Shown here in pieces: positions 7,438 through 41,978 of a stretch of DNA of 64,000 nucleotides; the first letter of the stretch is position 1; each line of letters starts with the position of its first letter. The stretch spans positions 122,202,001 through 122,266,000 of the forward strand of contig CM097883.1 in NCBI GenBank assembly GCA_044892505.1, given 5' to 3'. The notes under the pieces are model-generated. The model had not been told where the DNA came from. It did not search any database and saw only the letters and a list, made by a program, of their open reading frames with translations. The translations under genes were made by a program, and so were the position numbers. The DNA is from Schmidtea nova (taxonomy: Eukaryota).

Positions 7438-7469
7438 GTATGAGTAGGATTATTTTCTTTTTTCAACGA

Positions 7470-7690: not shown

Positions 7691-7692
7691 GT

Positions 7693-10700: not shown

Positions 10701-13700
10701 AAATTTTTCTAATACGAGAAACAAAAACGGACAAGATTAATGTTGATGTCATAAAATTTATTTAGGAAAAAAGTTGCCTTCGGTGAGAATTGAACTCACG
10801 ACCCCTGGTTTACTAGACCAGTGCTCTAACCACTGAGCTACGAAGGCTTGAAATTTGAGAGATTTGGATATAAATCTCTAAATTGGCATTCTGTACCGAA
10901 AAAATCAAAATCCAACCGATACACAAGTGTCGGACAATCAATAGGATTATTGTGTATAAATTTTTCTAATACGAGAAACAAAAACGGACAAGATTAATGT
11001 TGATGTCATAAAATTTATTTAGGAAAAAAGTTGCCTTCGGTGAGAATTGAACTCACGACCCCTGGTTTACTAGACCAGTGCTCTAACCACTGAGCTACGA
11101 AGGCTTGAAATTTGAGAGATTTGGATATAAATCTCTAAATTGGCATTCTGTACCGAAAAAATCAAAATCCAACCGATACACAAGTGTCGGACAATCAATA
11201 GGATTATTGTGTATAAATTTTTCTAATACGAGAAACAAAAACGGACAAGATTAATGTTGATGTCATAAAATTTATTTAGGAAAAAAGTTGCCTTCGGTGA
11301 GAATTGAACTCACGACCCCTGGTTTACTAGACCAGTGCTCTAACCACTGAGCTACGAAGGCTTGAAATTTGAGAGATTTGGATATAAATCTCTAAATTGG
11401 CATTCTGTACCGAAAAAATCAAAATCCAACCGATACACAAGTGTCGGACAATCAATAGGATTATTGTGTATAAATTTTTCTAATACGAGAAACAAAAACG
11501 GACAAGATTAATGTTGATGTCATAAAATTTATTTAGGAAAAAAGTTGCCTTCGGTGAGAATTGAACTCACGACCCCTGGTTTACTAGACCAGTGCTCTAA
11601 CCACTGAGCTACGAAGGCTTGAAATTTGAGAGATTTGGATATAAATCTCTAAATTGGCATTCTGTACCGAAAAAATCAAAATCCAACCGATACACAAGTG
11701 TCGGACAATCAATAGGATTATTGTGTATAAATTTTTCTAATACGAGAAACAAAAACGGACAAGATTAATGTTGATGTCATAAAATTTATTTAGGAAAAAA
11801 GTTGCCTTCGGTGAGAATTGAACTCACGACCCCTGGTTTACTAGACCAGTGCTCTAACCACTGAGCTACGAAGGCTTGAAATTTGAGAGATTTGGATATA
11901 AATCTCTAAATTGGCATTCTGTACCGAAAAAATCAAAATCCAACCGATACACAAGTGTCGGACAATCAATAGGATTATTGTGTATAAATTTTTCTAATAC
12001 GAGAAACAAAAACGGACAAGATTAATGTTGATGTCATAAAATTTATTTAGGAAAAAAGTTGCCTTCGGTGAGAATTGAACTCACGACCCCTGGTTTACTA
12101 GACCAGTGCTCTAACCACTGAGCTACGAAGGCTTGAAATTTGAGAGATTTGGATATAAATCTCTAAATTGGCATTCTGTACCGAAAAAATCAAAATCCAA
12201 CCGATACACAAGTGTCGGACAATCAATAGGATTATTGTGTATAAATTTTTCTAATACGAGAAACAAAAACGGACAAGATTAATGTTGATGTCATAAAATT
12301 TATTTAGGAAAAAAGTTGCCTTCGGTGAGAATTGAACTCACGACCCCTGGTTTACTAGACCAGTGCTCTAACCACTGAGCTACGAAGGCTTGAAATTTGA
12401 GAGATTTGGATATAAATCTCTAAATTGGCATTCTGTACCGAAAAAATCAAAATCCAACCGATACACAAGTGTCGGACAATCAATAGGATTATTGTGTATA
12501 AATTTTTCTAATACGAGAAACAAAAACGGACAAGATTAATGTTGATGTCATAAAATTTATTTAGGAAAAAAGTTGCCTTCGGTGAGAATTGAACTCACGA
12601 CCCCTGGTTTACTAGACCAGTGCTCTAACCACTGAGCTACGAAGGCTTGAAATTTGAGAGATTTGGATATAAATCTCTAAATTGGCATTCTGTACCGAAA
12701 AAATCAAAATCCAACCGATACACAAGTGTCGGACAATCAATAGGATTATTGTGTATAAATTTTTCTAATACGAGAAACAAAAACGGACAAGATTAATGTT
12801 GATGTCATAAAATTTATTTAGGAAAAAAGTTGCCTTCGGTGAGAATTGAACTCACGACCCCTGGTTTACTAGACCAGTGCTCTAACCACTGAGCTACGAA
12901 GGCTTGAAATTTGAGAGATTTGGATATAAATCTCTAAATTGGCATTCTGTACCGAAAAAATCAAAATCCAACCGATACACAAGTGTCGGACAATCAATAG
13001 GATTATTGTGTATAAATTTTTCTAATACGAGAAACAAAAACGGACAAGATTAATGTTGATGTCATAAAATTTATTTAGGAAAAAAGTTGCCTTCGGTGAG
13101 AATTGAACTCACGACCCCTGGTTTACTAGACCAGTGCTCTAACCACTGAGCTACGAAGGCTTGAAATTTGAGAGATTTGGATATAAATCTCTAAATTGGC
13201 ATTCTGTACCGAAAAAATCAAAATCCAACCGATACACAAGTGTCGGACAATCAATAGGATTATTGTGTATAAATTTTTCTAATACGAGAAACAAAAACGG
13301 ACAAGATTAATGTTGATGTCATAAAATTTATTTAGGAAAAAAGTTGCCTTCGGTGAGAATTGAACTCACGACCCCTGGTTTACTAGACCAGTGCTCTAAC
13401 CACTGAGCTACGAAGGCTTGAAATTTGAGAGATTTGGATATAAATCTCTAAATTGGCATTCTGTACCGAAAAAATCAAAATCCAACCGATACACAAGTGT
13501 CGGACAATCAATAGGATTATTGTGTATAAATTTTTCTAATACGAGAAACAAAAACGGACAAGATTAATGTTGATGTCATAAAATTTATTTAGGAAAAAAG
13601 TTGCCTTCGGTGAGAATTGAACTCACGACCCCTGGTTTACTAGACCAGTGCTCTAACCACTGAGCTACGAAGGCTTGAAATTTGAGAGATTTGGATATAA

Positions 13701-14885
13701 ATCTCTAAATTGGCATTCTGTACCGAAAAAATCAAAATCCAACCGATACACAAGTGTCGGACAATCAATAGGATTATTGTGTATAAATTTTTCTAATACG
13801 AGAAACAAAACGGACAAGATTAATGTTGATGTCATAAAATTTATTTAGGAAAAAAGTTGCCTTCGGTGAGAATTGAACTCACGACCCCTGGTTTACTAGA
13901 CCAGTGCTCTAACCACTGAGCTACGAAGGCTTGAAATTTGAGAGATTTGGATATAAATCTCTAAATTGGCATTCTGTACCGAAAAAATCAAAATCCAACC
14001 GATACACAAGTGTCGGACAATCAATAGGATTATTGTGTATAAATTTTTCTAATACGAGAAACAAAAACGGACAAGATTAATGTTGATGTCATAAAATTTA
14101 TTTAGGAAAAAAGTTGCCTTCGGTGAGAATTGAACTCACGACCCCTGGTTTACTAGACCAGTGCTCTAACCACTGAGCTACGAAGGCTTGAAATTTGAGA
14201 GATTTGGATATAAATCTCTAAATTGGCATTCTGTACCGAAAAAATCAAAATCCAACCGATACACAAGTGTCGGACAATCAATAGGATTATTGTGTATAAA
14301 TTTTTCTAATACGAGAAACAAAAACGGACAAGATTAATGTTGATGTCATAAAATTTATTTAGGAAAAAAGTTGCCTTCGGTGAGAATTGAACTCACGACC
14401 CCTGGTTTACTAGACCAGTGCTCTAACCACTGAGCTACGAAGGCTTGAAATTTGAGAGATTTGGATATAAATCTCTAAATTGGCATTCTGTACCGAAAAA
14501 ATCAAAATCCAACCGATACACAAGTGTCGGACAATCAATAGGATTATTGTGTATAAATTTTTCTAATACGAGAAACAAAAACGGACAAGATTAATGTTGA
14601 TGTCATAAAATTTATTTAGGAAAAAAGTTGCCTTCGGTGAGAATTGAACTCACGACCCCTGGTTTACTAGACCAGTGCTCTAACCACTGAGCTACGAAGG
14701 CTTGAAATTTGAGAGATTTGGATATAAATCTCTAAATTGGCATTCTGTACCGAAAAAATCAAAATCCAACCGATACACAAGTGTCGGACAATCAATAGGA
14801 TTATTGTGTATAAATTTTTCTAATACGAGAAACAAAAACGGACAAGATTAATGTTGATGTCATAAAATTTATTTAGGAAAAAAGT

Positions 14886-14958
14886 TGCCTTCAGTGAGAA
14901 TTGAACTCACGACCCCTGGTTTACTAGTCCATTGCTCTAACCACTGAGCTACGAAGGC
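14886..14958 (-). tRNA. TRNAT-AGU: Variant tRNA-Thr(AGT) (C27A, T31A, C66T by sequential count); same allele at 15143-15215 and 17713-17785
   Basis: + strand ttcagtgag and actagtccattg instead of ttcggtgag and actagaccagtg; two anticodon-stem pairs are broken, so it may be non-functional. Confidence 0.75.
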
Positions 14959-15399
14959 TTGAAATTTGAGAGATTTGGATATAAATCTCTAAATTGGCAT
15001 TCTGTACCGAAAAAATCAAAATCCAACCGATACACAAGTGTCGGACAATCAATAGGATTATTGTGTATAAATTTTTCTAATACGAGAAACAAAAACGGAC
15101 AAGATTAATGTTGATGTCATAAAATTTATTTAGGAAAAAAGTTGCCTTCAGTGAGAATTGAACTCACGACCCCTGGTTTACTAGTCCATTGCTCTAACCA
15201 CTGAGCTACGAAGGCTTGAAATTTGAGAGATTTGGATATAAATCTCTAAATTGGCATTCTGTACCGAAAAAATCAAAATCCAACCGATACACAAGTGTCG
15301 GACAATCAATAGGATTATTGTGTATAAATTTTTCTAATACGAGAAACAAAAACGGACAAGATTAATGTTGATGTCATAAAATTTATTTAGGAAAAAAGT

Positions 15400-15472
15400 T
15401 GCCTTCAGTGAGAATTGAACTCACGACCCCTGGTTTACTAGTCCAGTGCTCTAACCACTGAGCTACGAAGGC
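15400..15472 (-). tRNA. TRNAT-AGU: Variant tRNA-Thr(AGT) (T31A, C66T); same allele at 17970-18042
   Basis: + strand ttcagtgag and actagtccagtg. Confidence 0.75.
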
Positions 15473-18400
15473 TTGAAATTTGAGAGATTTGGATATAAAT
15501 CTCTAAATTGGCATTCTGTACCGAAAAAATCAAAATCCAACCGATACACAAGTGTCGGACAATCAATAGGATTATTGTGTATAAATTTTTCTAATACGAG
15601 AAACAAAAACGGACAAGATTAATGTTGATGTCATAAAATTTATTTAGGAAAAAAGTTGCCTTCGGTGAGAATTGAACTCACGACCCCTGGTTTACTAGAC
15701 CAGTGCTCTAACCACTGAGCTACGAAGGCTTGAAATTTGAGAGATTTGGATATAAATCTCTAAATTGGCATTCTGTACCGAAAAAATCAAAATCCAACCG
15801 ATACACAAGTGTCGGACAATCAATAGGATTATTGTGTATAAATTTTTCTAATACGAGAAACAAAAACGGACAAGATTAATGTTGATGTCATAAAATTTAT
15901 TTAGGAAAAAAGTTGCCTTCGGTGAGAATTGAACTCACGACCCCTGGTTTACTAGACCAGTGCTCTAACCACTGAGCTACGAAGGCTTGAAATTTGAGAG
16001 ATTTGGATATAAATCTCTAAATTGGCATTCTGTACCGAAAAAATCAAAATCCAACCGATACACAAGTGTCGGACAATCAATAGGATTATTGTGTATAAAT
16101 TTTTCTAATACGAGAAACAAAAACGGACAAGATTAATGTTGATGTCATAAAATTTATTTAGGAAAAAAGTTGCCTTCGGTGAGAATTGAACTCACGACCC
16201 CTGGTTTACTAGACCAGTGCTCTAACCACTGAGCTACGAAGGCTTGAAATTTGAGAGATTTGGATATAAATCTCTAAATTGGCATTCTGTACCGAAAAAA
16301 TCAAAATCCAACCGATACACAAGTGTCGGACAATCAATAGGATTATTGTGTATAAATTTTTCTAATACGAGAAACAAAAACGGACAAGATTAATGTTGAT
16401 GTCATAAAATTTATTTAGGAAAAAAGTTGCCTTCGGTGAGAATTGAACTCACGACCCCTGGTTTACTAGACCAGTGCTCTAACCACTGAGCTACGAAGGC
16501 TTGAAATTTGAGTGATTTGGATATAAATCTCTAAATTGGCATTCTGTACCGAAAAAATCAAAATCCAACCGATACACAAGTGTCGGACAATCAATAGGAT
16601 TATTGTGTATAAATTTTTCTAATACGAGAAACAAAAACGGACAAGATTAATGTTGATGTCATAAAATTTATTTAGGAAAAAAGTTGCCTTCGGTGAGAAT
16701 TGAACTCACGACCCCTGGTTTACTAGACCAGTGCTCTAACCACTGAGCTACGAAGGCTTGAAATTTGAGAGATTTGGATATAAATCTCTAAATTGGCATT
16801 CTGTACCGAAAAAATCAAAATCCAACCGATACACAAGTGTCGGACAATCAATAGGATTATTGTGTATAAATTTTTCTAATACGAGAAACAAAAACGGACA
16901 AGATTAATGTTGATGTCATAAAATTTATTTAGGAAAAAAGTTGCCTTCGGTGAGAATTGAACTCACGACCCCTGGTTTACTAGACCAGTGCTCTAACCAC
17001 TGAGCTACGAAGGCTTGAAATTTGAGAGATTTGGATATAAATCTCTAAATTGGCATTCTGTACCGAAAAAATCAAAATCCAACCGATACACAAGTGTCGG
17101 ACAATCAATAGGATTATTGTGTATAAATTTTTCTAATACGAGAAACAAAAACGGACAAGATTAATGTTGATGTCATAAAATTTATTTAGGAAAAAAGTTG
17201 CCTTCGGTGAGAATTGAACTCACGACCCCTGGTTTACTAGACCAGTGCTCTAACCACTGAGCTACGAAGGCTTGAAATTTGAGAGATTTGGATATAAATC
17301 TCTAAATTGGCATTCTGTACCGAAAAAATCAAAATCCAACCGATACACAAGTGTCGGACAATCAATAGGATTATTGTGTATAAATTTTTCTAATACGAGA
17401 AACAAAAACGGACAAGATTAATGTTGATGTCATAAAATTTATTTAGGAAAAAAGTTGCCTTCGGTGAGAATTGAACTCACGACCCCTGGTTTACTAGACC
17501 AGTGCTCTAACCACTGAGCTACGAAGGCTTGAAATTTGAGAGATTTGGATATAAATCTCTAAATTGGCATTCTGTACCGAAAAAATCAAAATCCAACCGA
17601 TACACAAGTGTCGGACAATCAATAGGATTATTGTGTATAAATTTTTCTAATACGAGAAACAAAAACGGACAAGATTAATGTTGATGTCATAAAATTTATT
17701 TAGGAAAAAAGTTGCCTTCAGTGAGAATTGAACTCACGACCCCTGGTTTACTAGTCCATTGCTCTAACCACTGAGCTACGAAGGCTTGAAATTTGAGAGA
17801 TTTGGATATAAATCTCTAAATTGGCATTCTGTACCGAAAAAATCAAAATCCAACCGATACACAAGTGTCGGACAATCAATAGGATTATTGTGTATAAATT
17901 TTTCTAATACGAGAAACAAAAACGGACAAGATTAATGTTGATGTCATAAAATTTATTTAGGAAAAAAGTTGCCTTCAGTGAGAATTGAACTCACGACCCC
18001 TGGTTTACTAGTCCAGTGCTCTAACCACTGAGCTACGAAGGCTTGAAATTTGAGAGATTTGGATATAAATCTCTAAATTGGCATTCTGTACCGAAAAAAT
18101 CAAAATCCAACCGATACACAAGTGTCGGACAATCAATAGGATTATTGTGTATAAATTTTTCTAATACGAGAAACAAAAACGGACAAGATTAATGTTGATG
18201 TCATAAAATTTATTTAGGAAAAAAGTTGCCTTCGGTGAGAATTGAACTCACGACCCCTGGTTTACTAGACCAGTGCTCTAACCACTGAGCTACGAAGGCT
18301 TGAAATTTGAGAGATTTGGATATAAATCTCTAAATTGGCATTCTGTACCGAAAAAATCAAAATCCAACCGATACACAAGTGTCGGACAATCAATAGGATT

Positions 18401-21053
18401 ATTGTGTATAAATTTTTCTAATACGAGAAACAAAAACGGACAAGATTAATGTTGATGTCATAAAATTTATTTAGGAAAAAAGTTGCCTTCGGTGAGAATT
18501 GAACTCACGACCCCTGGTTTACTAGACCAGTGCTCTAACCACTGAGCTACGAAGGCTTGAAATTTGAGAGATTTGGATATAAATCTCTAAATTGGCATTC
18601 TGTACCGAAAAAATCAAAATCCAACCGATACACAAGTGTCGGACAATCAATAGGATTATTGTGTATAAATTTTTCTAATACGAGAAACAAAAACGGACAA
18701 GATTAATGTTGATGTCATAAAATTTATTTAGGAAAAAAGTTGCCTTCGGTGAGAATTGAACTCACGACCCCTGGTTTACTAGACCAGTGCTCTAACCACT
18801 GAGCTACGAAGGCTTGAAATTTGAGAGATTTGGATATAAATCTCTAAATTGGCATTCTGTACCGAAAAAATCAAAATCCAACCGATACACAAGTGTCGGA
18901 CAATCAATAGGATTATTGTGTATAAATTTTTCTAATACGAGAAACAAAAACGGACAAGATTAATGTTGATGTCATAAAATTTATTTAGGAAAAAAGTTGC
19001 CTTCGGTGAGAATTGAACTCACGACCCCTGGTTTACTAGACCAGTGCTCTAACCACTGAGCTACGAAGGCTTGAAATTTGAGTGATTTGGATATAAATCT
19101 CTAAATTGGCATTCTGTACCGAAAAAATCAAAATCCAACCGATACACAAGTGTCGGACAATCAATAGGATTATTGTGTATAAATTTTTCTAATACGAGAA
19201 ACAAAAACGGACAAGATTAATGTTGATGTCATAAAATTTATTTAGGAAAAAAGTTGCCTTCGGTGAGAATTGAACTCACGACCCCTGGTTTACTAGACCA
19301 GTGCTCTAACCACTGAGCTACGAAGGCTTGAAATTTGAGAGATTTGGATATAAATCTCTAAATTGGCATTCTGTACCGAAAAAATCAAAATCCAACCGAT
19401 ACACAAGTGTCGGACAATCAATAGGATTATTGTGTATAAATTTTTCTAATACGAGAAACAAAAACGGACAAGATTAATGTTGATGTCATAAAATTTATTT
19501 AGGAAAAAAGTTGCCTTCGGTGAGAATTGAACTCACGACCCCTGGTTTACTAGACCAGTGCTCTAACCACTGAGCTACGAAGGCTTGAAATTTGAGAGAT
19601 TTGGATATAAATCTCTAAATTGGCATTCTGTACCGAAAAAATCAAAATCCAACCGATACACAAGTGTCGGACAATCAATAGGATTATTGTGTATAAATTT
19701 TTCTAATACGAGAAACAAAAACGGACAAGATTAATGTTGATGTCATAAAATTTATTTAGGAAAAAAGTTGCCTTCGGTGAGAATTGAACTCACGACCCCT
19801 GGTTTACTAGACCAGTGCTCTAACCACTGAGCTACGAAGGCTTGAAATTTGAGAGATTTGGATATAAATCTCTAAATTGGCATTCTGTACCGAAAAAATC
19901 AAAATCCAACCGATACACAAGTGTCGGACAATCAATAGGATTATTGTGTATAAATTTTTCTAATACGAGAAACAAAAACGGACAAGATTAATGTTGATGT
20001 CATAAAATTTATTTAGGAAAAAAGTTGCCTTCGGTGAGAATTGAACTCACGACCCCTGGTTTACTAGACCAGTGCTCTAACCACTGAGCTACGAAGGCTT
20101 GAAATTTGAGAGATTTGGATATAAATCTCTAAATTGGCATTCTGTACCGAAAAAATCAAAATCCAACCGATACACAAGTGTCGGACAATCAATAGGATTA
20201 TTGTGTATAAATTTTTCTAATACGAGAAACAAAAACGGACAAGATTAATGTTGATGTCATAAAATTTATTTAGGAAAAAAGTTGCCTTCGGTGAGAATTG
20301 AACTCACGACCCCTGGTTTACTAGACCAGTGCTCTAACCACTGAGCTACGAAGGCTTGAAATTTGAGAGATTTGGATATAAATCTCTAAATTGGCATTCT
20401 GTACCGAAAAAATCAAAATCCAACCGATACACAAGTGTCGGACAATCAATAGGATTATTGTGTATAAATTTTTCTAATACGAGAAACAAAAACGGACAAG
20501 ATTAATGTTGATGTCATAAAATTTATTTAGGAAAAAAGTTGCCTTCGGTGAGAATTGAACTCACGACCCCTGGTTTACTAGACCAGTGCTCTAACCACTG
20601 AGCTACGAAGGCTTGAAATTTGAGAGATTTGGATATAAATCTCTAAATTGGCATTCTGTACCGAAAAAATCAAAATCCAACCGATACACAAGTGTCGGAC
20701 AATCAATAGGATTATTGTGTATAAATTTTTCTAATACGAGAAACAAAAACGGACAAGATTAATGTTGATGTCATAAAATTTATTTAGGAAAAAAGTTGCC
20801 TTCGGTGAGAATTGAACTCACGACCCCTGGTTTACTAGACCAGTGCTCTAACCACTGAGCTACGAAGGCTTGAAATTTGAGAGATTTGGATATAAATCTC
20901 TAAATTGGCATTCTGTACCGAAAAAATCAAAATCCAACCGATACACAAGTGTCGGACAATCAATAGGATTATTGTGTATAAATTTTTCTAATACGAGAAA
21001 CAAAAACGGACAAGATTAATGTTGATGTCATAAAATTTATTTAGGAAAAAAGT

Positions 21054-21126
21054 TGCCTTCGGTGAGAATTGAACTCACGACCCCTGGTTTACTAGACCAG
21101 TGCTCTAACCACTGAGCTACGAAGGC
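21054..21126 (-). tRNA. TRNAT-AGU: tRNA-Thr(AGT), last full-length copy of the array
   Basis: Identical to 7693-7765. Confidence 0.96.
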
Positions 21127-21310: not shown

Positions 21311-21353
21311 TGCCTTCGGTGAGAATTGAACTCACGACCCCTGGTTTACTAGA
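21311..21353 (-). pseudogene. 3' half (nt 31-73) of the tRNA-Thr interrupted by copy 2; 21345-21353 is the TSD
   Basis: cccctgg-tttactaga joined directly to the element 3' end ttaaacatttatt. Confidence 0.93.
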
Positions 21354-21872
21354 TTAAACATTTATTATGATAACAAATTTTAGATTTTACACAAATGAGA
21401 CGGTTCAACTTGGAACCTGCCATTCAAATCAATAATGTTTTAATGAGACAATTTTCAGTTTTTGTAATATCACATTGCGAAAATATCTGTCTCAAGAAAT
21501 CAAATCTCTTTGAATCTTCTCTGGCATTCTCTGATTTTCATCGGGATATCATTCCGGCTTTGCGATTTCAAGTTGAGAATAGTATCAAAATTGAAGTTCT
21601 CGCAGCTGCATTTTCTTAGCATTTAATAATCAATCAGCAGAAATATTGAATTCTCTGATTTACAGGACAGTTGAATACAATATGATCTCGATGCTAGATA
21701 TTATTTCAAATGCTTTTTTTCTAAATTAAAAATAGAGCAATTCTCTGAATAAAGATTAGGATAATAAACTTTAATGACTTTCAAGGTAGTCAAGAAATGA
21801 CTAACGGAAAAATGAATTACACAAAACAGAAAAATAATGATAATGCTCCCAATTTCGCAATAGAAATAATTT

Positions 21873-24800
21873 TTATGTGGTTGGAAGAAAACCAGTAGCA
21901 TGAAAATGCCATGATTTGGCAGAGTGCGAGATGTTACTAAGCGCACATGCTTTCAATAGATCGGGTATTTTCGAAATCTTTACACCCATTCTTTCAAGAA
22001 CATCATTAGTTGCTGGTGGAACAGATCCTAAAGAACCAATTATACAAGTGTACAAGTCGACTGTAAAGTTTGGTTTAGCTGATTTGATTTTCAATTTTAG
22101 AGATTCATATTTTTCTATATTTCTTTTATTGACATCATCAAAATTTGCTATTGTGTCAAAGGGACACTTTACGTCAACCATGAGAATTGTCTTTTTGTCA
22201 TTGTTGGTAATAATTAAATCAACTCGTTCTTTAGAGTCGCGAACTAACGAACATGCATGGTCCACTACAACAATCAATTTAGGGTCTTTTAAATGTTGAG
22301 TAATCTGTTCGAGACAGTCGTTGTGACGCGAAAGTGCAAGAATTTGATGAACTTTACAATTTTGTAGGACATGTAACAAAGTTTCTTCATCTTTATGACA
22401 ACGTCGACAAATCCTCTCATCAGGTTTTCTATATGGTTTTGCGAAATTAGCTAGAGTGTTTGTTCTGGCACGATGGATGAATTTCCAAGAACCTTCACGC
22501 AATTTCCCTCTAAATATCGCTTTGTTTATGTCGGGAGATAAGCTATATGCTGATGAGCCACTTATGTTACTATTTTTCCATTTAGTAAAATAAGAGTCAT
22601 AGAGAGCAAGGTGCAGAATCTTTGAGATGGCTTTTCGGTTTAAGCACTTCAATATAATTGTGCCATTTGTAATTGTTGTGAGACGAATGATGGGTTCGTT
22701 TTCCAACACTTCAAACGATATTGTTATTTTGTGTGTCTTTTCAAAATATTGAATTGCTGTGCGTGGTCGGTAAAATCGGGTTTTCTTTCCCGAATGTTGT
22801 TTAATCATGTTGGCTCCATTAATCCAACTGAAGCTTTCTTGTAGCGATGGGTTGTTAATTCCAAGTCGAGGCCCAGTTACAAACTTTAGTGAATCTATAT
22901 TTATCTTTTTTGCCAAGGGACAGATTGAAGTAAAAAGTCTAAAGAAATGACTGATGGTTTGTGTGTGATATTCGTCGAGTAGATCAATACAAGAAGCACC
23001 TCCATTTTCAATAGAGTTGTAAAAGTAGCTGATTTCAGAATGATCAGACAAATTCATCATTTTTCTTAAATACTTCCTAAGCTTTGTTGTACTATTACCG
23101 ATATTAGCAGAAAGAGCACTAATTTTAATTTCTCTTGTTCTAAATGGGAAAATTAGACGAGAGTGTATGAAAATCTTGTAAGCTTTCAGCTTTTGCCAGC
23201 CGTACAAGTCTGAGTCGGCAAGTTTCTTGGTATCACTAACCACCTTATCAAGGATGTCATAAGGACTTTGGTCAGGGTCTTCACCTATTGGTACTCCAAG
23301 ATATTCATAAAATTCTTTATTTAATAATTTCTTAATGATTGTATTGTCGACAGTTATCTCACTTGTTGTATTGACACTTGGAAGTTGAATAAATGCACAT
23401 TTTTCTGGTCGATACTCAAAGCCTATTTCAGATGCAGTGTCATGTGCAATGTTTATTATCATTTGCAAGTCCTTAGCATTATTAGCAATAAGAGCAATAT
23501 CGTCAGCATATGCAAGAACTTGGATTGAAGATTCACCAAGTTTAAAAAGATTGACACTTGAAAGACTAACAGCTTGAAGAACAGGATTGATTGCTATTGC
23601 AAACAAGACCATTGAAAGAGGACATCCTTGTTTAACTCCTTGTTTTATTGCAATGTTTGGTGTTACAATCGGACCACAGGTATAGAAGGAGCTAGTTTCA
23701 GTGTACAAAAGTTTCAAAATCTTAGTAAATTTCTCACTCATTCCAATATGACGCAAAATCGCCCACATGTAATCATGAGGTACACTACCAAAAGCGTCCT
23801 TAATGTCAAGAAATGCAATAGCAACAGGTGTATTTTTACTGTATTTCGAGTGTTCAAGACAAGATGAAAGTATGGAATTGTGTTCAACACATCCATCATG
23901 AATAGAACCTCCTTTTTGTCCAACATGAAGAACATTATTTAGATTCACCCACAGTGTCAAACGTCTAGCTAAAATTGATGAGAATAATTTGTAAACAACA
24001 GATAACAAAGCAATTGGACGCCAAGATGAGATTAAAGTGTATTTATCACCCTTGTCGTGTTTAGGAATCATTAACGTTTTGAAGGTTTTCCAAACGTCTG
24101 GAATTGTATTTTCCCTAATGATTTTATTAAATAAAAAGGTCAACAATTTACCCTCTGGATCAAGAATTGCAATGTCTTTATATTGAATTCCATCAAGCCC
24201 AGGAGAAGTATTATCAGCGTTTTTCAACTCATAGAGTACCTCTTTTTCACTGATCAAATTCAGATTTAGAGTATTTAAAGATTTAATTGCAAATTTAAAA
24301 ACTTTGTCATGATTCTTTAAAATAGGATCTCGATGACTAAAATTATCTATGTGATCTTTAATTGTTGGTCTATCCTTTATGTCGTCACTCATAAATATTT
24401 TATTTATTGTCTTTTTCATATTTTTATTAAAAGATGACGCCAAGTTAGTATTAGATGGTTTGTCTTTATTTGTTTTGTTTCCTAAATATGGCCTACGTAA
24501 TTTAGTTAAATTGACTTCTTCTTTACTTTTGGCAATAGTAGTAATAATAAATTCCGTTATTTCGTTAACATTTGAATTTTGTAGATTTAACAAATGCTCA
24601 TTTATCAAAGTTATACGTTGATTTATTTTAAGTTTAACATGTTGCTTTTCAATTTGTAAAGGCGTTAATGGAATTTCCATACATTCTTTTACAGGTGGTA
24701 GGAGAGAATTTACAACATTACCAATGTCATGCAAATTAATGTTTTCAAGAGACAAGTCTAGAGCGTAGTTCTTGATGAAAGCACAGGTGAGAACCCTGCT

Positions 24801-26435
24801 TACAAGACCAGAACCTCGAACATCATGTGGACAATTACCAGTTTTGCTACAAAGACCAGGAGATTCTCGTATTTCATTGACTTTAGTTATTAAAGCTTTA
24901 GCAGTAGATAGGTAAGGAGCATTATTCTCTAAAGTTGTTGGGTTTAATAAATAATGTTCATTATTGTTGTAGTCAATGACAAGCAGGATTTGTTGAGCTT
25001 GTGGTGGAGCAATAATTGAAAAAACAACTTGTGCTTTAGTTAGACGATCAATATTTAAAAAATCATTCAAATATTGAGTGCAGTCATCTAATATTGCAGT
25101 GCAAATGGTATTGTTTAAAAATATGAACCTTTCACACAGATTTAAATTATTAAAATAATTTGTTAAAATATTATTCGTAATTTTAAAATTTAAAAAGTTT
25201 AGATTTAACGCCACTTGATCAAGTATTTTGGAATGAATAGTGTCGAGCTTTTCAATTACTCTATCTCTATTGCAAATAGATCCTGAAATATATTGCTCCA
25301 AAAACATTATGAAAGTCGTGGCATGTTCTATTGGATCATCAGAAAACATTGAAGTTCGAAAAAGAGTATGACGATGTTATTGAAATTTTATTGAATTTTC
25401 TAAGATAAATTTATTTAAATAATCTGTCATATTTTCTCCAATTCCCAGCAGTCTTTCAGTTATATTCGTAGAGCGAACGTCAAAAATATAACTGCAGCCA
25501 AGACTAATTGAACAAAGAAAGAGACACCAATAGTTATCATTTGGAACAATACTGATAATAATGCGAATATCCTTAAATTGTTTAAAAGTAACATTGTCTC
25601 TTATATAAATATTATTTTGATTAATCAAATTAATTGTTAGTTCAGGAGAAAACACAAGCACACTTGGATCATTTTGAAACCACTTATTTAAGAGTGTAGA
25701 AACACAAGCTTTCTCGTTGTTAAGTTTTATTGGTTTAACAATGTTGTTATTTTGGTGAATATTCTTTTTAAGCGCCATTGCTTTATTTAAATTAATTTTA
25801 TTAAGAAAATGATTCTTTGGCAATCCACCACCCGATAATTTGACATTGTGATTTGATTGACCTTTTTTAAAATCGTGGATCTGTTTTCTAATGTTCAAGA
25901 TAAAATCATCAGGTAAACATTCCCATTCTCCACTAACAATCATTGCGTATGCACAAATAAAAGGTCCACAATCAAAATCATTATTTTGATATTTGAGATT
26001 TTTAATTGGATTGTCAGTTATTTGGTTGTGACGTTTGAATTTATTATTTAATACTGAGTTTATTTTTAGAGCATTAACTTTGCTGTCTAATCTATTCCTA
26101 TAATTAAAGATTGGATCAATAAAATAAGACGTCAAAGAAGTCTTGCAATAAACAAACAAGACCCAATGGCAATTATTAATATTGAGAGGACACAATATTA
26201 CTTGGGATTCAAAAATTGTTTGAGGTATCGGAAAAATATCATCGGTCATATTTGAGCATAAAATACTTACAACAAAACATTTAATGAAAGCAAAACTAGG
26301 GTTGCTGATGTGACTTTCAAAGAAATAGTCAATGTCATCATCAGTGAACCAACATTTTAAATCATGAATGTCAAGAGTGCATTCTGCATCAGTCTCGTCA
26401 GACAATGCAGTACATGTAGAGGCTGATGCAGGCAC
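21873..26435 (-). pseudogene. ORF2 of copy 2, split by Q353*
   Basis: Track ORFs of 352 aa and 1158 aa are in the same frame; copy 1 has CAA at the equivalent position 3952-3954. Confidence 0.9.
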
Positions 26436-26441
26436 ATCCCA

Positions 26442-28862
26442 TCATTTGGTGATCGCCTTTGATAGTTTATGGTCTTTTCTAGTAGTCATTTTTCTAATGT
26501 CTGTATTTTTAGGTGGTAAACAAGATGTAGACTGCGCATCAATATCAGTTTCTAAGAGAGCCGATTTAATGATACCTGTATTATTTGAATCTGCGACATT
26601 GGAGCTAACGCTAACATCTTTACAAGTGTCTTTAGAAATTTCAATAACATCAACAGATTCACTACTAGTCAGAAGATTTTCAAGAGAGTCAACAAGATCA
26701 AAGATAACTGAAGTCATTTCAGCATTACAAATTTTACGACATTTAATCGGAACATGAAAATAATCTATGTTCTTATTCAAAAATCTTTTCTTGTCTCTTA
26801 TTATAAAGTATATCAGTCGTTTAGCCTTGATTATGTTAATGTCATCACACTCAGAACGGAATTCATTTATGTGTGAAAAGACAGAGTCTATTGCATTCAG
26901 TTGGTTACTTTTTTGGGGAAACAAGTTATTAATTAATTTTAAAAATTTATTAATTCTTTTAATTGTATCTTGTGAAATTATATTTTTTAATTTATCAATC
27001 TCACAGGTCAGCATCCATTGTTTGAATTTTATAAGTTTTTCCTGACAACTAATTCTAAAGTATGAAGACAAAGGTATTTTATCAACAAATTCAGAGCCCC
27101 ACACTTCAAAAGAGTCAATAGTCAAGGAATCGCATTTAACACAGTCTATAACTGAATGAATAAGTAAGGAATTACGGAAATAATTGACAACATAATTATC
27201 ATAATTTATATTTCTTGAATATTTAATATTACTTTTTAAGTTTAAATAATTAAGATAGTAAATTAATTCCACAATCTTAATAGGAGAAGCGGGTAATGAT
27301 AAAAGTTGATCTAAATGCTTATCAGTTCTACACATTTCATGCAAATCAAATAACCCAATATTAAACATTATATCAGAGGCATTGCTAGAATCAGCTTCTT
27401 TCATCGCAGATTTACAATCAACAGTAAATTTACCATCTATAAATGAAATGTTCTTTGGAAAATCCTTATTTAATTTTAAACTATTAATTAAATTAATTAA
27501 TTTATCAGGATTTTTTGAAATATTTTCAATAAAAATCATTTCTTTTAGTTCAGGGTAATCGAGATAGAGTTTATTTATTTGTGATCTTGTAAGATTATTT
27601 GAAATTAATTCAAAACCAGCATTATGACAATTATCAGAAGTGGAAAAGTCTTTCATTATAAAGTCACCGTCAACATACCTTATTTCTGATTTAACAAGAA
27701 AGTCTGGCAATTGTTTTTGCAATTTTAACAAATCTAAGGCTTTATTAATAACGCTTCCCTTTTGAATTTCATTTTTAATAGAGACAGTTTCTGCCAATTT
27801 GCTTGAGAGAGCAAATAAAAATTTTTTTATTTCTAAAGGTGCAGGAATGAGGTTAGATGTAAAATTATCGGTAGAAATAATATCCGAAATAAATGTTTTT
27901 TTCTTATTTAAAATATTAAGGTTTTGAGGAAGTTGATTAGAGTTAGCCATTTTATTACTATTTAATTTAATCGAAGCACAAAAATTATTGTTTCGATAAA
28001 ATATGTGATCAAAATCCTCAACAAACTTAAAATTTGAATTATTTATTAAAGAAAGTTCATAATTTATACGATCATATTTATTTACGGATTTCTTTAATTT
28101 TAATAGTTCTTTTAAACGTGGAAAATTATTAATTAAATTGGTACGCTCATTTTTAGTTAAAATCCGGGGTAAAAAATCAAATTTAAATTCATCAATTTTA
28201 ACATTTCTTTTCCCCTTATTTAGTGAAATTTTAACAGATTTTTTAATTAAAGTTTTACTAAAACTATCATCAGAAACTAGGTCTAAATTTTGACCGTCTG
28301 CTTCAGCGTAAGATTTATCAGAAGGTTTTGGTATATCATTTATATCATTAGAATTATTATTTAATTTTATATTACTATTTAATTTAGAAATATGATTATT
28401 TTTATTATTATTAAAATTATGAAAATTAGGAGCATTATCAAAATTATTAACGTTTAAAGAATTCAAGATTCCAACAATCAAATCAAGTTTACCCTGAAAA
28501 TCAACAAAGTTCTTCTCCAGAGCAACCATTCGTTTGAAAAGTCCGTCATCAGAAGTTGGAGGAAAAGAAATTCCATCTGATTTTTCAGGCAAAACATCCA
28601 TTTTAGATTGTGTCTTGGGTAAATAATTTGCCTGAAAAGCATTGAAATTTCTCTCAAGAATCTCCACTCGTCTGCCAGGTTCATCTTTAAGCATAGAGAT
28701 TTTTTCTGATCTTTTCTTTAAAATATCCATAAGACATTGAGAAGATTGAATTTGTCTTCTCAGAAAATCAACGATTAGCATATTTTCATTTAGATTTGAC
28801 TGATTACACAATAAATCATCAGGGTGACTCTGATTGGCCGATTGCATAATTCCAGTGTGCAT
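26442..28862 (-). CDS. ORF1 of copy 2 (806 aa)
   Basis: Near-identical to 5017-7437. Confidence 0.8.
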   Translation of the reverse strand: MHTGIMQSANQSHPDDLLCNQSNLNENMLIVDFLRRQIQSSQCLMDILKKRSEKISMLKDEPGRRVEILERNFNAFQANYLPKTQSKMDVLPEKSDGISFPPTSDDGLFKRMVALEKNFVDFQGKLDLIVGILNSLNVNNFDNAPNFHNFNNNKNNHISKLNSNIKLNNNSNDINDIPKPSDKSYAEADGQNLDLVSDDSFSKTLIKKSVKISLNKGKRNVKIDEFKFDFLPRILTKNERTNLINNFPRLKELLKLKKSVNKYDRINYELSLINNSNFKFVEDFDHIFYRNNNFCASIKLNSNKMANSNQLPQNLNILNKKKTFISDIISTDNFTSNLIPAPLEIKKFLFALSSKLAETVSIKNEIQKGSVINKALDLLKLQKQLPDFLVKSEIRYVDGDFIMKDFSTSDNCHNAGFELISNNLTRSQINKLYLDYPELKEMIFIENISKNPDKLINLINSLKLNKDFPKNISFIDGKFTVDCKSAMKEADSSNASDIMFNIGLFDLHEMCRTDKHLDQLLSLPASPIKIVELIYYLNYLNLKSNIKYSRNINYDNYVVNYFRNSLLIHSVIDCVKCDSLTIDSFEVWGSEFVDKIPLSSYFRISCQEKLIKFKQWMLTCEIDKLKNIISQDTIKRINKFLKLINNLFPQKSNQLNAIDSVFSHINEFRSECDDINIIKAKRLIYFIIRDKKRFLNKNIDYFHVPIKCRKICNAEMTSVIFDLVDSLENLLTSSESVDVIEISKDTCKDVSVSSNVADSNNTGIIKSALLETDIDAQSTSCLPPKNTDIRKMTTRKDHKLSKAITK

Positions 28863-28894
28863 GATTGAGTAGAATTATTTTCCTTTTTCAACGA

Positions 28895-29160
28895 TTTACT
28901 AGACCAGTGCTCTAACCACTGAGCTACGAAGGCTTGAAATTTGAGAGATTTGGATATAAATCTCTAAATTGGCATTCTGTACCGAAAAAATCAAAATCCA
29001 ACCGATACACAAGTGTCGGACAATCAATAGGATTATTGTGTATAAATTTTTCTAATACGAGAAACAAAAACGGACAAGATTAATGTTGATGTCATAAAAT
29101 TTATTTAGGAAAAAAGTTGCCTTCGGTGAGAATTGAACTCACGACCCCTGGTTTACTAGA
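28895..29160 (-). repeat. Single array spacer between copies 2 and 3, carrying two tRNA halves; same 266-bp block at 36663-36928 and 44432-44697
   Basis: One 257-bp unit plus the 9-bp TSD, beginning and ending with tttactaga. Confidence 0.93.
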
Positions 29161-29641
29161 TTAAACATTTATTATGATAACAAATTTTAGATTTTACACA
29201 AATGAGACGGTTCAACTTGGAACCTGCCATTCAAATCAATAATGTTTTAATGAGACAATTTTCAGTTTTTGTAATATCACATTGCGAAAATATCTGTCTC
29301 AAGAAATCAAATCTCTTTGAATCTTCTCTGGCATTCTCTGATTTTCATCGGGATATCATTCCGGCTTTGCGATTTCAAGTTGAGAATAGTATCAAAATTG
29401 AAGTTCTCGCAGCTGCATTTTTCTGATTTACAGGACAGTTGAATACAATATGATCTCGATGCTAGATATTATTTCAAATGCTTTTTTTCTAAATTAAAAA
29501 TAGAGCAATTCTCTGAATAAAGATTAGGATAATAAACTTTAATGACTTTCAAGGTAGTCAAGAAATGACTAACGGAAAAAATGAATTACACAAAACAGAA
29601 AAATAATGGTAATGCTCCTAATTTCGCAATAAAAATAATTT

Positions 29642-32600
29642 TTATGTGGTTGGAAGAAAACCAGTAGCATGAAAATGCCATGTTTTGGCAGAGTGCGAGA
29701 TGTTACTAAGCGCACATGCTTTCAATAGATCGGGTATTTTCGAAATCTTTACACCCATTTTTTCAAGAACATCATTAGTTGCTGGTGGAACAGATCCTAA
29801 AGAACCAATTATACAAGTGTACAAGTCAACTGTAAAGTTTGGTTTAGCTGATTTGATTTTCAATTTTAGAGATTCATATTTTTCTATATTTCTTTTATTG
29901 ACATCATCAAAATTTGCTATTGTGTCAAAGGGACACTTTACGTCAACCATGAGAATTGTCTTTTTGTCATTGTTGGTAATAATTAAATCAACTCGTTCTT
30001 TAGAGTCGCGAACTAACGAACATGCATGGTCCACTACAACAATCAATTTAGGGTCTTTTAAATGTTGAGTAATCTGTTCGAGACAGTCGTTGTGACGCGA
30101 AAGTGCAAGAATTTGATGAACTTTACAATTTTGTAGGACATGTAACAAAGTTTCTTCATCTTTATGACAACGTCGACAAATCCTCTCATCAGGTTTTCTA
30201 TATGGTTTTGCGAAATTAGCTAGAGTATTTGTTCTTGCACGATGGATGAATTTCCAAGAACCTTCACGCAATTTCCCTCTAAATATCGCTTTGTTTATGT
30301 CGGGAGATAAGCTATATGCTGATGACCCACTTATGTTACTATTTTTCCATTTAGTAAAATAAGAGTCATAGAGAGCAAGGTGCAAAATCTTTGAGATGGC
30401 TTTTCGGTTTAAGCACTTCAATATAATTGTGCCATTTGTAATTGTTGTGAGACGAATGATGGGTTCGTTTTCCAACACTTCAAACGATATTGTTATTTTG
30501 TGTGTCTTTTCAAAATATTGAATTGCTGTGCGTGGTCGGTAAAATCGGGTTTTCTTTCCCGAATGTTGTTTAATCATGTTGGCTCCATTAATCCAACTGA
30601 AGCTTTCTTGTAGCGATGGGTTGTTAATTCCAAGTCGAGGCCCAGTTACAAACTTTAGTGAATCTATATTTATCTTTTTTGCCAAGGGACAGATTGAAGT
30701 AAAAAGTCTAAAGAAATGACTGATGGTTTGTGTGTGATATTCGTCGAGTAGATCAATACAAGAAGCACCTCCATTTTCAATAGAGTTGTAAAAGTAGCTG
30801 ATTTCAGAATGATCAGACAAATTCATCATTTTTCTTAAATACTTCCTAAGCTTTGTTGTACTATTACCGATATTAGCAGAAAGAGCACTAATTTTAATTT
30901 CTCTTGTTCTAAATGGGAAAATTAGACGAGAGTGTATGAAAATCTTGTAAGCTTTCAGCTTTTGCCAGCCGTACAAGTCTGAGTCGGCAAGTTTCTTGGT
31001 ATCACTAACCACCTTATCAAGGATGTCATAAGGACTTTGGTCAGGGTCTTCACCTATTGGTACTCCAAGATATTCATAAAATTCTTTATTTAATAATTTC
31101 TTAATGATTGTATTGTCGACAGTTATCTCACTTGTTGTATTGACACTTGGAAGTTGAATAAATGCACATTTTTCTGGTCGATACTCAAAGCCTATTTCAG
31201 ATGCAGTGTCATGTGCAATGTTTATTATCATTTGCAAGTCCTTAGCATTATTAGCAATAAGAGCAATATCGTCAGCATATGCAAGAACTTGGATTGAAGA
31301 TTCACCAAGTTTAAAAAGATTGACACTTGAAAGACTAACAGCTTGAAGAACAGGATTGATTGCTATTGCAAACAAGACCATTGAAAGAGGACATCCTTGT
31401 TTAACTCCTTGTTTTATTGCAATGTTTGGTGTTACAATCGGACCACAGGTATAGAAGGAGCTAGTTTCAGTGTACAAAAGTTTCAAAATCTTAGTAAATT
31501 TCTCACTCATTCCAATATGACGCAAAATCGCCCACATGTAATCATGAGGTACACTACCAAAAGCGTCCTTAATGTCAAGAAATGCAATAGCAACAGGTGT
31601 ATTTTTACTGTATTTCGAGTGTTCAAGACAAGATGAAAGTATGGAATTGTGTTCAACACATCCATCATGAATAGAACCTCCTTTTGTCCAACATGAAGAA
31701 CATTATTTAGATTCACCCACAGTGTCAAACGTCTAGCTAAAATTGATGAGAATAATTTGTAAACAACAGATAACAAAGCAATTGGACGCCAAGATGAGAT
31801 TAAAGTGTATTTATCACCCTTGTCGTGTTTAGGAATCATTAACGTTTTGAAGGTTTTCCAAACGTCTGGAATTGTATTTTCCCTAATGATTTTATTAAAT
31901 AAAAAGGTCAACAATTTACCCTCTGGATCAAGAATTGCAATGTCTTTATATTGAATTCCATCAAGCCCAGGAGAAGTATTATCAGCGTTTTTCAACTCAT
32001 AGAGTACCTCTTTTTCACTGATCAAATTCAGATTTAGAGTATTTAAAGATTTAATTGCAAATTTAAAAACTTTGTCATGATTCTTTAAAATAGGATCTCG
32101 ATGACTAAAATTATCTATGTGATCTTTAATTGTTGGTCTATCCTTTATGTCGTCACTCATAAATATTTTATTTATTGTCTTTTTCATATTTTTATTAAAA
32201 GATGACGCCAAGTTAGTATTAGATGGTTTGTCTTTATTTGTTTTGTTTCCTAAATATGGCCTACGTAATTTAGTTAAATTGACTTCTTCTTTACTTTTGG
32301 CAATAGTAGTAATAATAAATTCCGTTATTTCGTTAACATTTGAATTTTGTAGATTTAACAAATGCTCATTTATCAAAGTTATACGTTGATTTATTTTAAG
32401 TTTAACATGTTGCTTTTCAATTTGTAAAGGCGTTAATGGAATTTCCATACATTCTTTTACAGGTGGTAGGAGAGAATTTACAACATTACCAATGTCATGC
32501 AAATTAATGTTTTCAAGAGACAAGTCTAGAGCGTAGTTCTTGATGAAAGCACAGGTGAGAACCCTGCTTACAAGACCAGAACCTCGAACATCATGTGGAC

Positions 32601-34203: not shown

Positions 34204-34209
34204 ATCCCA

Positions 34210-41972: not shown

Positions 41973-41978
41973 ATCCCA

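What the first reader, a model, noticed from the sequence alone, without database searches (positions are those of the whole stretch)
21341..21357. The TSD is the anticodon loop plus its closing pair, and both inferred nicks fall at the symmetric motif A^CCAG
Seen: the target is the dyad CTGG-N9-CCAG (the anticodon stem) and the TSD is N9 = TCTAGTAAA (tRNA nt 31-39). Under standard TPRT geometry the first nick is +strand ctggtttactagA^CCAG and the second is -strand CTGGTCTAGTAAA^CCAG. Both cut immediately 5' of CCAG. Inference: the endonuclease reads the tRNA stem palindrome, or an extruded hairpin, symmetrically. This differs from the asymmetric site recognition described for R2.
Basis: partly seen in the sequence, partly recalled or inferred. 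Interest (0 to 1): 0.8.

Follow-up and report, generated by a model that had tools for sequence, protein, structure and literature searches.

The report
tRNA-Thr-specific retrotransposon, 9-bp duplication
A jumping gene of a known kind (NeSL/R2-like, with a restriction-like endonuclease) sits in the anticodon stem-loop of threonine tRNA genes and duplicates 9 bases there. The mirror-image position of the two inferred cuts is real as geometry, but nothing yet shows that the enzyme reads the site symmetrically.

Summary
**Observation: confirmed.**
- The window holds a tandem array of tRNA-Thr(AGT) genes on the minus strand, with a 257-bp period.
- Five copies of one roughly 7.5-kb non-LTR retrotransposon lie in it, in the tRNA orientation.
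- Every junction reads ...CTGG TCTAGTAAA | element | TCTAGTAAA CCAG...
- Intact genes carry the 9-mer once. It is tRNA nt 31-39: the anticodon loop plus its closing pair.
- Under target-primed reverse transcription, both inferred nicks fall just 5' of CCAG, one on each strand.

**Interpretation: only partly supported.**
- Symmetric reading of the stem palindrome, or of an extruded hairpin, has no direct support.
- B, C and D share one premature stop, so as few as two insertion events may underlie all the junctions.
- Relatives (27-51% identical ORF2) place their 3' junction in tRNA D-loops or in a satellite repeat.
- Where both ends of a relative are known, the duplication is about 40 or 70-72 bp and has no mirrored motif.
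- The 17-nt DNA hairpin is worth only -2.3 to -2.7 kcal/mol.
- A symmetric pair of nicks is still rare under a uniform null (0.6-0.8%).

**Novelty.** tRNA-targeting NeSL-like elements are already published. This one is a new member of a known kind.

The parts
7693..21126 (-). Tandem array of 53 intact tRNA-Thr(AGT) genes, 257-bp period. This is the uninterrupted target.
   Evidence: ARAGORN. 44 of 57 units are identical. Rfam tRNA hit.
21084..21100 (-). Reference empty site: the dyad CTGG-TCTAGTAAA-CCAG (tRNA nt 27-43) in the intact gene next to copy B
21341..21344 (-). CCAG half-site (tRNA nt 40-43) next to the 3' copy of the duplication of element B
21345..21353 (-). 3' copy of the 9-bp target-site duplication TCTAGTAAA of element B
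21354..28894 (-). Element copy B, full length (7541 bp). It has a 32-nt 5' UTR, a 519-nt 3' UTR, no poly(A), and ends ...GTTTAA.
28895..28903 (-). 5' copy of the 9-bp duplication of element B
28904..28907 (-). CTGG half-site (tRNA nt 27-30) upstream of element B
26442..28862 (-). ORF1 of copy B (806 aa). No detectable relatives or domains. It ends in the conserved in-frame TGA.
21873..26441 (-). ORF2 of copy B, given as one part: Ulp1-like protease, RT, CCHC knuckle and restriction-like endonuclease. Broken by one premature stop in this copy.
   Evidence: Relatives have one ORF of about 1500 aa.
25932..26222 (-). Ulp1/C48 peptidase domain of ORF2
   Evidence: Pfam PF02902, E 5.6e-09. PDB 1euv.
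23289..24068 (-). Reverse transcriptase domain of ORF2
   Evidence: Pfam PF00078, E 3.4e-29. R2 structures 9nl2/9nl3, E 1e-51/1e-44.
21981..22409 (-). CCHC knuckle plus restriction-like endonuclease (RH..., D, D-x-K)
   Evidence: Aligned to the endonuclease region of R2 structures. Key residues are the same in 12 of 12 relatives.
1..7469 (-). Element copy A. Its 3' side is cut by the window edge (about 72 nt of 3' UTR missing). Both ORFs are open (ORF1 5017-7437, ORF2 448-5016).
7470..7478 (-). 5' copy of the 9-bp duplication of element A
29161..36662 (-). Element copy C, flanked by TCTAGTAAA at 29152-29160 and 36663-36671. ORF2 has one premature stop (the one shared with B and D) and one frameshift.
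36929..44431 (-). Element copy D, flanked by TCTAGTAAA at 36920-36928 and 44432-44440. ORF2 has one premature stop (shared with B and C).
44698..46044 (-). Element fragment E. The 3' end is intact, with TCTAGTAAA at 44689-44697. It has one internal deletion and lacks the 5' part, and no tRNA 5' half lies upstream.

Best explanation
**What it is.** A site-specific non-LTR retrotransposon of the NeSL/R2 group. ORF1 is followed by an ORF2 carrying a Ulp1-like protease, a reverse transcriptase, a CCHC knuckle and a restriction-like endonuclease. Its target is the tRNA-Thr(AGT) gene.

**Shown**
- The element and its domains.
- Its orientation.
- A 9-bp, target-derived duplication of tRNA nt 31-39 at every junction.

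**Inferred from target-primed reverse transcription**
- The antisense strand is nicked between nt 30 and 31, and primes cDNA synthesis from the element's 3' end.
- The sense strand is opened between nt 39 and 40.
- This leaves 9-nt 3' overhangs that are filled in.

**My reading of the symmetry**
- Both nicks lie 5' of CCAG because the two cuts bracket the inner 9 bp of a stem dyad that every tRNA gene has.
- The positions are most likely set as in R2. A protein anchored asymmetrically on the tRNA gene makes the first nick. The second nick is placed at a fixed short distance, possibly by a second subunit.
- A local preference of the endonuclease for the CCAG context may contribute. It is not needed to explain the data.
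For: - **Domains and homology to solved R2 proteins**, including the endonuclease region.
- **Relatives with Ulp1 and RT in one ORF of about 1500 aa:**
- **Junctions:** identical and exact at four 5' and four 3' ends. There is a single 9-mer in 50 or more intact genes.
- **3' boundary:** the element's 3' terminus aligns with those of relatives up to the junction. The sequences then diverge into each relative's own target. The flanking repeat is therefore target sequence, not a conserved element end.
- **First-nick position varies among relatives:** tRNA-Val nt 14/15 (L007), the tRNA-Phe D-loop (L008), a satellite repeat (L003).
- **Duplication length varies:**
  - 9 bp here.
  - 70-72 bp in L003.
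  - About 40 bp in LIN15_SM.
  - 9 bp in R8 and 13 bp in R4.
  - 126 bp in R9.
- **No mirrored motif in the other cases:** L003 and LIN15_SM show none at their two junctions.
- **R2 precedent:**
  - The bound protein sits on upstream DNA.
  - A second subunit nicks the second strand without sequence-specific recognition.
- **Published precedent for the target class:** NeSL-related families specific for tRNA-Pro, tRNA-Arg and tRNA-Glu, with 3' ends ending ...tttttaa like this one.
Against: - A pair of nicks with 4 or more identical bases 3' of each cut is expected in only 0.6-0.8% of random (nick, stagger) combinations in this tRNA. Pure coincidence is therefore not comfortable.
- No zinc-finger or Myb DNA-binding domain of the R2 type was detected in ORF1 or in the N-terminal half of ORF2. 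The asymmetric anchor is assumed, not seen.
- No 5' junction is available for the D-loop-targeting relatives. Whether their cuts are also mirrored about a hairpin is unknown.
Confidence: 0.6

Rival explanations
1. **Symmetric half-site reading.** The endonuclease contacts CCAG on each strand of duplex DNA and cuts just 5' of it. It does so either as two protomers related by the dyad or as one protomer rebinding after a 180-degree turn. The 9-bp stagger would then be dictated by the spacing of the two half-sites.
For: - Both inferred nicks are A^CCAG.
- Such symmetry is rare under a uniform null.
- CCAG occurs only at these two places on the two strands of the tRNA gene.
- The endonuclease has the PD-(D/E)xK-type residues of restriction enzymes.
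- A two-subunit mechanism for the two nicks is now documented for R2.
Against: - There is one target only, and possibly just two independent insertion events.
- Nick contexts in relatives share no CCAG-like motif.
- L003 and LIN15_SM have long duplications with no mirrored sequence.
- A 4-bp half-site could not by itself give tRNA-Thr specificity.
Confidence: 0.2
2. **Structure-specific cutting.** The anticodon stem-loop is extruded from the duplex as a hairpin or small cruciform. Each hairpin is then cut at the same place in its 3' arm, in the manner of a junction-resolving enzyme.
For: - R2 protein cleaves an open four-way DNA junction in a resolvase-like reaction, and that model has been extended to elements that make 9-13 bp duplications.
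- Both strands of the 17-mer can fold.
Against: - The hairpins are worth only -2.3 and -2.7 kcal/mol, with 5-6 bp stems. That is far less than the 17 bp of duplex they would replace.
- From general knowledge, cruciform extrusion needs longer arms and short spacers.
- The cuts lie near the loop, not at the base where a four-way junction would be.
Confidence: 0.05
3. **The duplication is inherited, not remade at each insertion.** The element RNA carries flanking tRNA sequence from a co-transcript. New copies are joined through base-pairing with the target on both sides, or copies spread within the array by unequal crossing-over. In either case the junctions do not report where the enzyme cuts today.
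For: - B, C and D sit in consecutive 257-bp units and share one premature stop. C and D differ by 2 substitutions.
- All 5' junctions are identical, and no ordinary 5'-truncated copy is seen.
- In R2, cDNA pairing with upstream target DNA is the favoured way to form the 5' junction.
- The 5' UTR is only 32 nt, which fits transcription from upstream.
Against: - A and B differ by 54 substitutions, while the tRNA units around them are identical. That fits separate insertions better than one ancient duplication.
- No ribozyme or other processing signal was found.
- Even on this view, the first event needed a 9-bp stagger at these positions.
Confidence: 0.15

Closest known systems
NeSL-related tRNA-gene-specific families: LIN15_SM (tRNA-Arg) and LIN25_SM (tRNA-Glu) of the planarian Schmidtea mediterranea, and NeSL-1_TV (tRNA-Pro). 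Source: Kojima and Jurka 2015, PMC4640811.
   Same: - Restriction-like-endonuclease non-LTR elements inserted in tRNA genes in the gene's orientation.
- No poly(A).
- The 3' ends finish ...ataataa(a)(n)gttttaa / ...tttttaa, much like ...ataataaatgtttaa here (read by eye from machine-read text).
- AT-rich host.
   Different: - The target here is tRNA-Thr(AGT), and the site is inside the anticodon stem-loop.
- The published families join at the D-arm or at the D/anticodon-stem boundary.
- LIN15_SM appears to duplicate about 40 bp, against 9 bp here.
- No phylogeny was run, so how close the relationship is remains untested.
NeSL-1 of Caenorhabditis elegans and Utopia-1_TSP
   Same: A Ulp1-like cysteine protease lies upstream of the RT in the same protein, with a C-terminal CCHC knuckle and restriction-like endonuclease.
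   Different: - Their targets are spliced-leader and U2 snRNA genes.
- They have N-terminal zinc fingers, which were not detected here.
- This element has a separate 806-aa ORF1.
R2 (28S rDNA-specific). Solved structures: 9nl2, 9nl3, 9dou, 8gh6.
   Same: - RT and endonuclease align (E 1e-51, with the endonuclease stretch at 1e-05).
- Insertion is by target-primed reverse transcription into a multicopy RNA gene.
- The 3' junction is precise.
   Different: - In R2 the second nick lies 2 bp upstream of the first, giving a small deletion.
- R2 binds its target through N-terminal zinc fingers and a Myb domain.
- R2 has a single ORF and no protease.
R8 (Hydra, 9-bp duplication), R4 (13 bp) and R9 (126 bp)
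   Same: Restriction-like-endonuclease elements that make target-site duplications. R8 has the same 9-bp length.
   Different: - Their targets are rRNA genes.
- No report was found of a dyad at their sites.
Dada DNA transposons
   Same: They also target tRNA genes, with hot spots around the anticodon arm and the A box.
   Different: - They are DNA transposons with a transposase and 6-7 bp duplications.
- At the anticodon arm they insert opposite to the tRNA orientation.
- They are unrelated in mechanism.

Membership tests
Non-LTR retrotransposon with restriction-like endonuclease (R2 group in the broad sense) | Reverse transcriptase of the non-LTR type | tested here: met
   PF00078, E 3.4e-29. 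Best PDB matches are R2 proteins, E 1e-51. YADD is conserved.
Non-LTR retrotransposon with restriction-like endonuclease (R2 group in the broad sense) | C-terminal CCHC knuckle followed by a PD-(D/E)xK-type endonuclease | tested here: met
   The region aligns to the endonuclease of R2 structures. C, C, H, C, RH, D and D-x-K are the same in 12 of 12 relatives.
Non-LTR retrotransposon with restriction-like endonuclease (R2 group in the broad sense) | No LTRs or terminal inverted repeats; fixed 3' end; insertion in one orientation at one site of a multicopy gene | tested here: met
   Five copies share the same site and orientation. The 3' ends align with those of relatives.
NeSL clade / planarian LIN families | Ulp1-like cysteine protease upstream of the RT | tested here: met
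   PF02902, E 5.6e-09. PDB Ulp1 1euv. The same architecture is seen in relatives and is described for NeSL.
NeSL clade / planarian LIN families | Placement inside the clade in an RT phylogeny with reference NeSL, Utopia, LIN and R2 sequences | not tested
   No reference NeSL or LIN protein sequences were available through the tools. The only named hits were R2 and LINE-1 structures.
NeSL clade / planarian LIN families | N-terminal zinc-finger motifs | tested here: not met
   No zinc-finger or Myb family was found in ORF1 or the N-terminal half of ORF2 by Pfam or by PDB sequence search. Divergent motifs could have been missed.
R2 proper | Insertion at the conserved 28S rDNA site, with the second nick 2 bp upstream | tested here: not met
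   The target is tRNA-Thr, and the 9-bp duplication implies a second nick 9 bp downstream.
Palindrome-cutting (type II-like) endonuclease behaviour | Two-fold symmetric recognition of both half-sites, with mirrored cuts | tested here: inconclusive
   The mirrored cut positions are inferred. Recognition itself cannot be read from sequence, and relatives show no such pattern.

The most novel reading that the evidence does not exclude
In this lineage the restriction-like endonuclease acts as a true two-fold symmetric cutter. Two protomers, or one that rebinds, each recognise CCAG on opposite strands of the anticodon-stem dyad. The tRNA's own palindrome would then set a precise 9-bp stagger. That would be a target-recognition mode not described for any non-LTR retrotransposon.
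Probability: 0.2. Interest if true: 0.65.

Novelty: new member of a known kind. Interest (0 to 1): 0.4.

Why it matters
[quoted passage not shown] How the second strand is opened, and what sets the length of the duplication, are open questions.

**What this element offers.**
- A family that lands in a short, fully defined, perfectly dyad-symmetric site.
- A short, exact duplication, while its relatives make 40-70 bp duplications elsewhere in tRNA genes. This gives a natural comparison set for those questions.

**If the symmetry proves meaningful.** It would show that a restriction-like endonuclease of a retrotransposon can use a palindrome the way restriction enzymes do.

**If it does not.** The finding is one more tRNA-specific NeSL-like family.

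Tried and rejected
- **Other copies of this element:** an exact look-up of ORF1 found nothing on record. The best ORF2 relative is only 51% identical. No further junctions from the same or a sister species could be obtained.
- **ORF1 relatives, to reach more 5' junctions:** none by word search, Pfam or PDB.
- **Contigs of eleven relatives and twelve metagenome loci:**
  - Only L003 has both ends.
  - L001, L007 and L008 give 3' junctions only.
  - L002 and L006 have ends I could not place with confidence.
  - The rest stop inside the element.
- **Ribozyme or other processing RNA at the element's ends:** no Rfam match apart from the tRNA.
- **Flanking tRNA units as markers of independent insertion versus array duplication:** uninformative, because the units between and beside the elements are identical to the majority unit.
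- **Natural half-site variants in the array (C27A in three units, T31A in two):** none carries an element, but the numbers are far too small to mean anything.
- **DNA transposon or LTR element:** rejected. There is no transposase or integrase and there are no terminal repeats, and the protein is an R2-like RT with endonuclease.
- **Alternative genetic code to explain the in-frame TGA after ORF1:** not pursued. The stop and its downstream context are conserved in eight elements from different samples.
- **Not run:** the exhaustive protein search and structure prediction. Neither bears on where the cuts fall.

Full report
**1. What is at the coordinates**

The window carries a tandem array of tRNA-Thr(AGT) genes on the minus strand. 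There are 53 intact genes between 7693 and 21126, with a 257-bp period. Forty-four of 57 repeat units are identical.

The intact gene contains CTGGTCTAGTAAACCAG. ARAGORN places the anticodon at position 34. The 5-bp anticodon stem is therefore nt 27-31/39-43, and TCTAGTAAA is nt 31-39: the 7-nt loop plus the T31-A39 closing pair. The 17-mer is present 50 times at one mismatch or fewer and never in shuffles.

The finding's interval, 21341-21357, is the 3' junction of one inserted element. It covers the complement of CCAG, then the complement of the 9-mer, then the element's last four bases.

**2. The inserted element**

A self-comparison shows five copies of one element, all in the tRNA orientation (with bounds refined).

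| Copy | Window coordinates | State |
|---|---|---|
| A | 1-7469 | 3' side cut by the window edge |
| B | 21354-28894 | full length, 7541 bp |
| C | 29161-36662 | full length |
| D | 36929-44431 | full length |
| E | 44698 to about 46044 | fragment |

- B, C and D occupy consecutive 257-bp units.
- ORF2 carries a Ulp1-like peptidase, a reverse transcriptase, a CCHC knuckle and a restriction-like endonuclease.
- Its best matches among solved structures are R2 proteins (E 1e-51), and the endonuclease stretch aligns as well.
- The cysteines and histidine of the knuckle, the RH, and the D and D-x-K residues are identical in all 12 aligned relatives.
- ORF1 (806 aa) has no detectable relatives or domains.
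- The element has a 32-nt 5' UTR, a 519-nt 3' UTR and no poly(A).

State of the copies:
- A has both reading frames open.
- B, C and D share one premature stop in ORF2.
- C has one frameshift in addition.
- E has one internal deletion and lacks its 5' part.

The in-frame TGA that ends ORF1 is not a break. It is conserved in seven relatives together with the following GTGCCTGCA.

**3. The duplication**

- All four 5' junctions read ...CTGGTCTAGTAAA|TCGTTGAAAAA.
- All four 3' junctions read ...AATGTTTAA|TCTAGTAAACCAG.
- The bases just outside the 9-mer differ between the two sides, so the repeat is exactly 9 bp.
- The last 70 nt or so of the element align with the 3' ends of relatives up to the junction. 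The sequences then diverge into each relative's own target. The repeat is therefore target sequence, not a conserved element terminus.

**4. The geometry**

- The element's sense strand is the window minus strand.
- In target-primed reverse transcription the primer is then the + strand end ...TTTACTAGA-3'. In an empty site that end is followed by CCAG.
- The upstream flank ends ...GTAAA-3' on the tRNA strand, again followed by CCAG.
Both inferred nicks lie immediately 5' of CCAG, and the cuts leave 9-nt 3' overhangs.
- It follows automatically once the duplication equals the inner 9 bp of a dyad.
- I counted how often such symmetry would arise if the first nick and the stagger were drawn at random in this tRNA. 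The result is 0.6-0.8% for four or more shared bases and about 2% for three.
- That is suggestive. It is also one post-hoc observation under a crude null.

**5. How many independent events**

- A and B differ by 54 substitutions, while the tRNA units around them are identical. This fits separate insertions.
- B, C and D share a premature stop. C and D differ by two substitutions and one indel. They could be DNA-level duplicates or copies of one defective source.
- The identical junctions may therefore reflect as few as two events.

**6. Relatives**

ORF2 has relatives at 27-51% identity with the same Ulp1-RT-endonuclease architecture, all from unnamed assemblies.

| Relative | Where it sits | Source |
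|---|---|---|
| L007 | Joins a tRNA-Val at nt 15, in the D-loop, next to three intact tRNA-Val genes | |
| L008 | Joins a tRNA-Phe in the D-loop | |
| L001 | Ends against 10 bases that look like a D-arm, where the contig stops | |
| L003 | Sits in a roughly 200-bp tandem repeat, flanked by a 70-72 bp duplication | |

The literature already describes NeSL-related families specific for tRNA-Pro (Trichomonas) and for tRNA-Arg and tRNA-Glu (the planarian Schmidtea) (PMC4640811). Its supplementary figure shows:
- 3' ends ending ...tttttaa, much like the end here;
- a LIN15_SM 3' junction near nt 25;
- a LIN15_SM 5' junction near nt 65, that is, a duplication of about 40 bp (machine-read text, so approximate).

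In neither L003 nor LIN15_SM do the two junctions mirror each other. The nick contexts of the relatives share no CCAG-like motif. The family therefore targets tRNA genes in general. The site within the gene and the stagger both change from lineage to lineage.

**7. Hairpin extrusion**

- As single-stranded DNA, the 17-mer folds with only -2.3 kcal/mol on the tRNA strand and -2.7 kcal/mol on the complement.
- That is far too little to displace 17 bp of duplex.
- The cuts lie near the loop rather than at the base of the stem, where a four-way junction would be.
- A resolvase-like step on a branched intermediate is documented for R2 and has been extended in a model to elements with 9-13 bp duplications.
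- That model concerns an intermediate made during integration, not a pre-formed cruciform.

**8. Comparison with R2**

- In R2 the protein stays bound to upstream DNA through zinc fingers and a Myb domain. The second nick lies 2 bp upstream of the first.
- In avian R2 a second subunit makes that nick. It is recruited mainly by protein contacts and does not recognise DNA sequence. When this nick fails, large duplications result.
No R2-type DNA-binding domains were detected here.
- A two-subunit reaction is no longer foreign to R2.
- Duplications of 9 bp (R8), 13 bp (R4) and 126 bp (R9) are known in the group.

**9. Verdict**

The element is a tRNA-Thr(AGT)-specific member of the NeSL-like, restriction-like-endonuclease retrotransposons: a known kind with a new target and an unusually short, exact duplication for its relatives.

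| Reading | My probability |
|---|---|
| Asymmetric anchoring on the tRNA gene with a fixed 9-bp stagger that happens to bracket the loop | about 0.6 |
| Symmetric half-site reading | about 0.2 |
| Duplication carried along with the element, or spread by array recombination | about 0.15 |
| Extruded hairpin | about 0.05 |

**10. Limits**

- The source organism is not identified. A flatworm is suggested only by the likeness to planarian LIN families and by the AT-rich sequence.
- No RT phylogeny was run.
- No 5' junction of a D-loop-targeting relative was available.

Noticed in passing
window 26420-26450 (-); also L001, L002, L003, L004, L006, L007 and L021 at the ORF1/ORF2 boundary: ORF1 always ends in an in-frame TGA. 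Two codons later comes the conserved GTGCCTGCA (Val-Pro-Ala), which opens ORF2 in the same frame. This was seen in this element and in seven relatives. It looks like a native stop-codon readthrough or reinitiation signal rather than a defect.
   Followed up: partly
window 1-7469 (-): Copy A has both reading frames open (ORF1 806 aa, ORF2 about 1520 aa). Copies B, C and D share one premature stop in ORF2, and C has one more frameshift. A differs from B by 54 substitutions, although the tRNA units around both are identical.
   Followed up: yes
window 7470-21353 and the units at 28895-29160, 36663-36928 and 44432-44697: The tRNA-Thr array is extremely homogeneous: 44 of 57 units are identical. 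A few variant units carry C27A (three units) or T31A (two units) in the anticodon stem, and three units are 256 bp long. None of the variant units carries an element.
   Followed up: partly
window 21354-21425 (-); L001 6925-6995; L003 7470-7515: The last 70 nt or so of the 3' UTR are conserved across relatives that are only 41-51% identical in protein. The conserved parts are a GGTTC...GAACC hairpin and an AAATTTGTTAT box about 17 nt before the end. This region is a candidate protein-binding 3' element.
   Followed up: partly
window 29161-36662 and 36929-44431: Copies C and D share a 39-nt deletion in the 3' UTR relative to A and B. They differ from each other by only two substitutions and one indel, which suggests a very recent common origin.
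   Followed up: partly
window 44698-46100: Fragment E closes the array. Its 3' end and duplication are intact, it has one internal deletion, and its 5' part is missing. Unrelated sequence lies upstream instead of a tRNA 5' half.
   Followed up: partly
window 63308-63617: A 310-bp stretch is 75% identical to part of the element's ORF2 region. It is probably a remnant of a different family of the same group.
   Followed up: no
window 58415-60580 (+): An open frame of 721 codons lies in a locally GC-richer stretch (43% against about 30%). It has no Pfam match, and what it is was not determined.
   Followed up: no
L003 1-140 and 7515-8223: The target of relative P0004 is a tandem repeat of about 200 bp with no Rfam match. 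The element is flanked by a 70-72 bp duplication of it.
   Followed up: partly
L022 3193-6698: A relative of the element is followed by piggyBac-like (DDE_Tnp_1_7) and Tc1-like (DDE_3) transposase genes. This suggests nested insertions in that contig.
   Followed up: no
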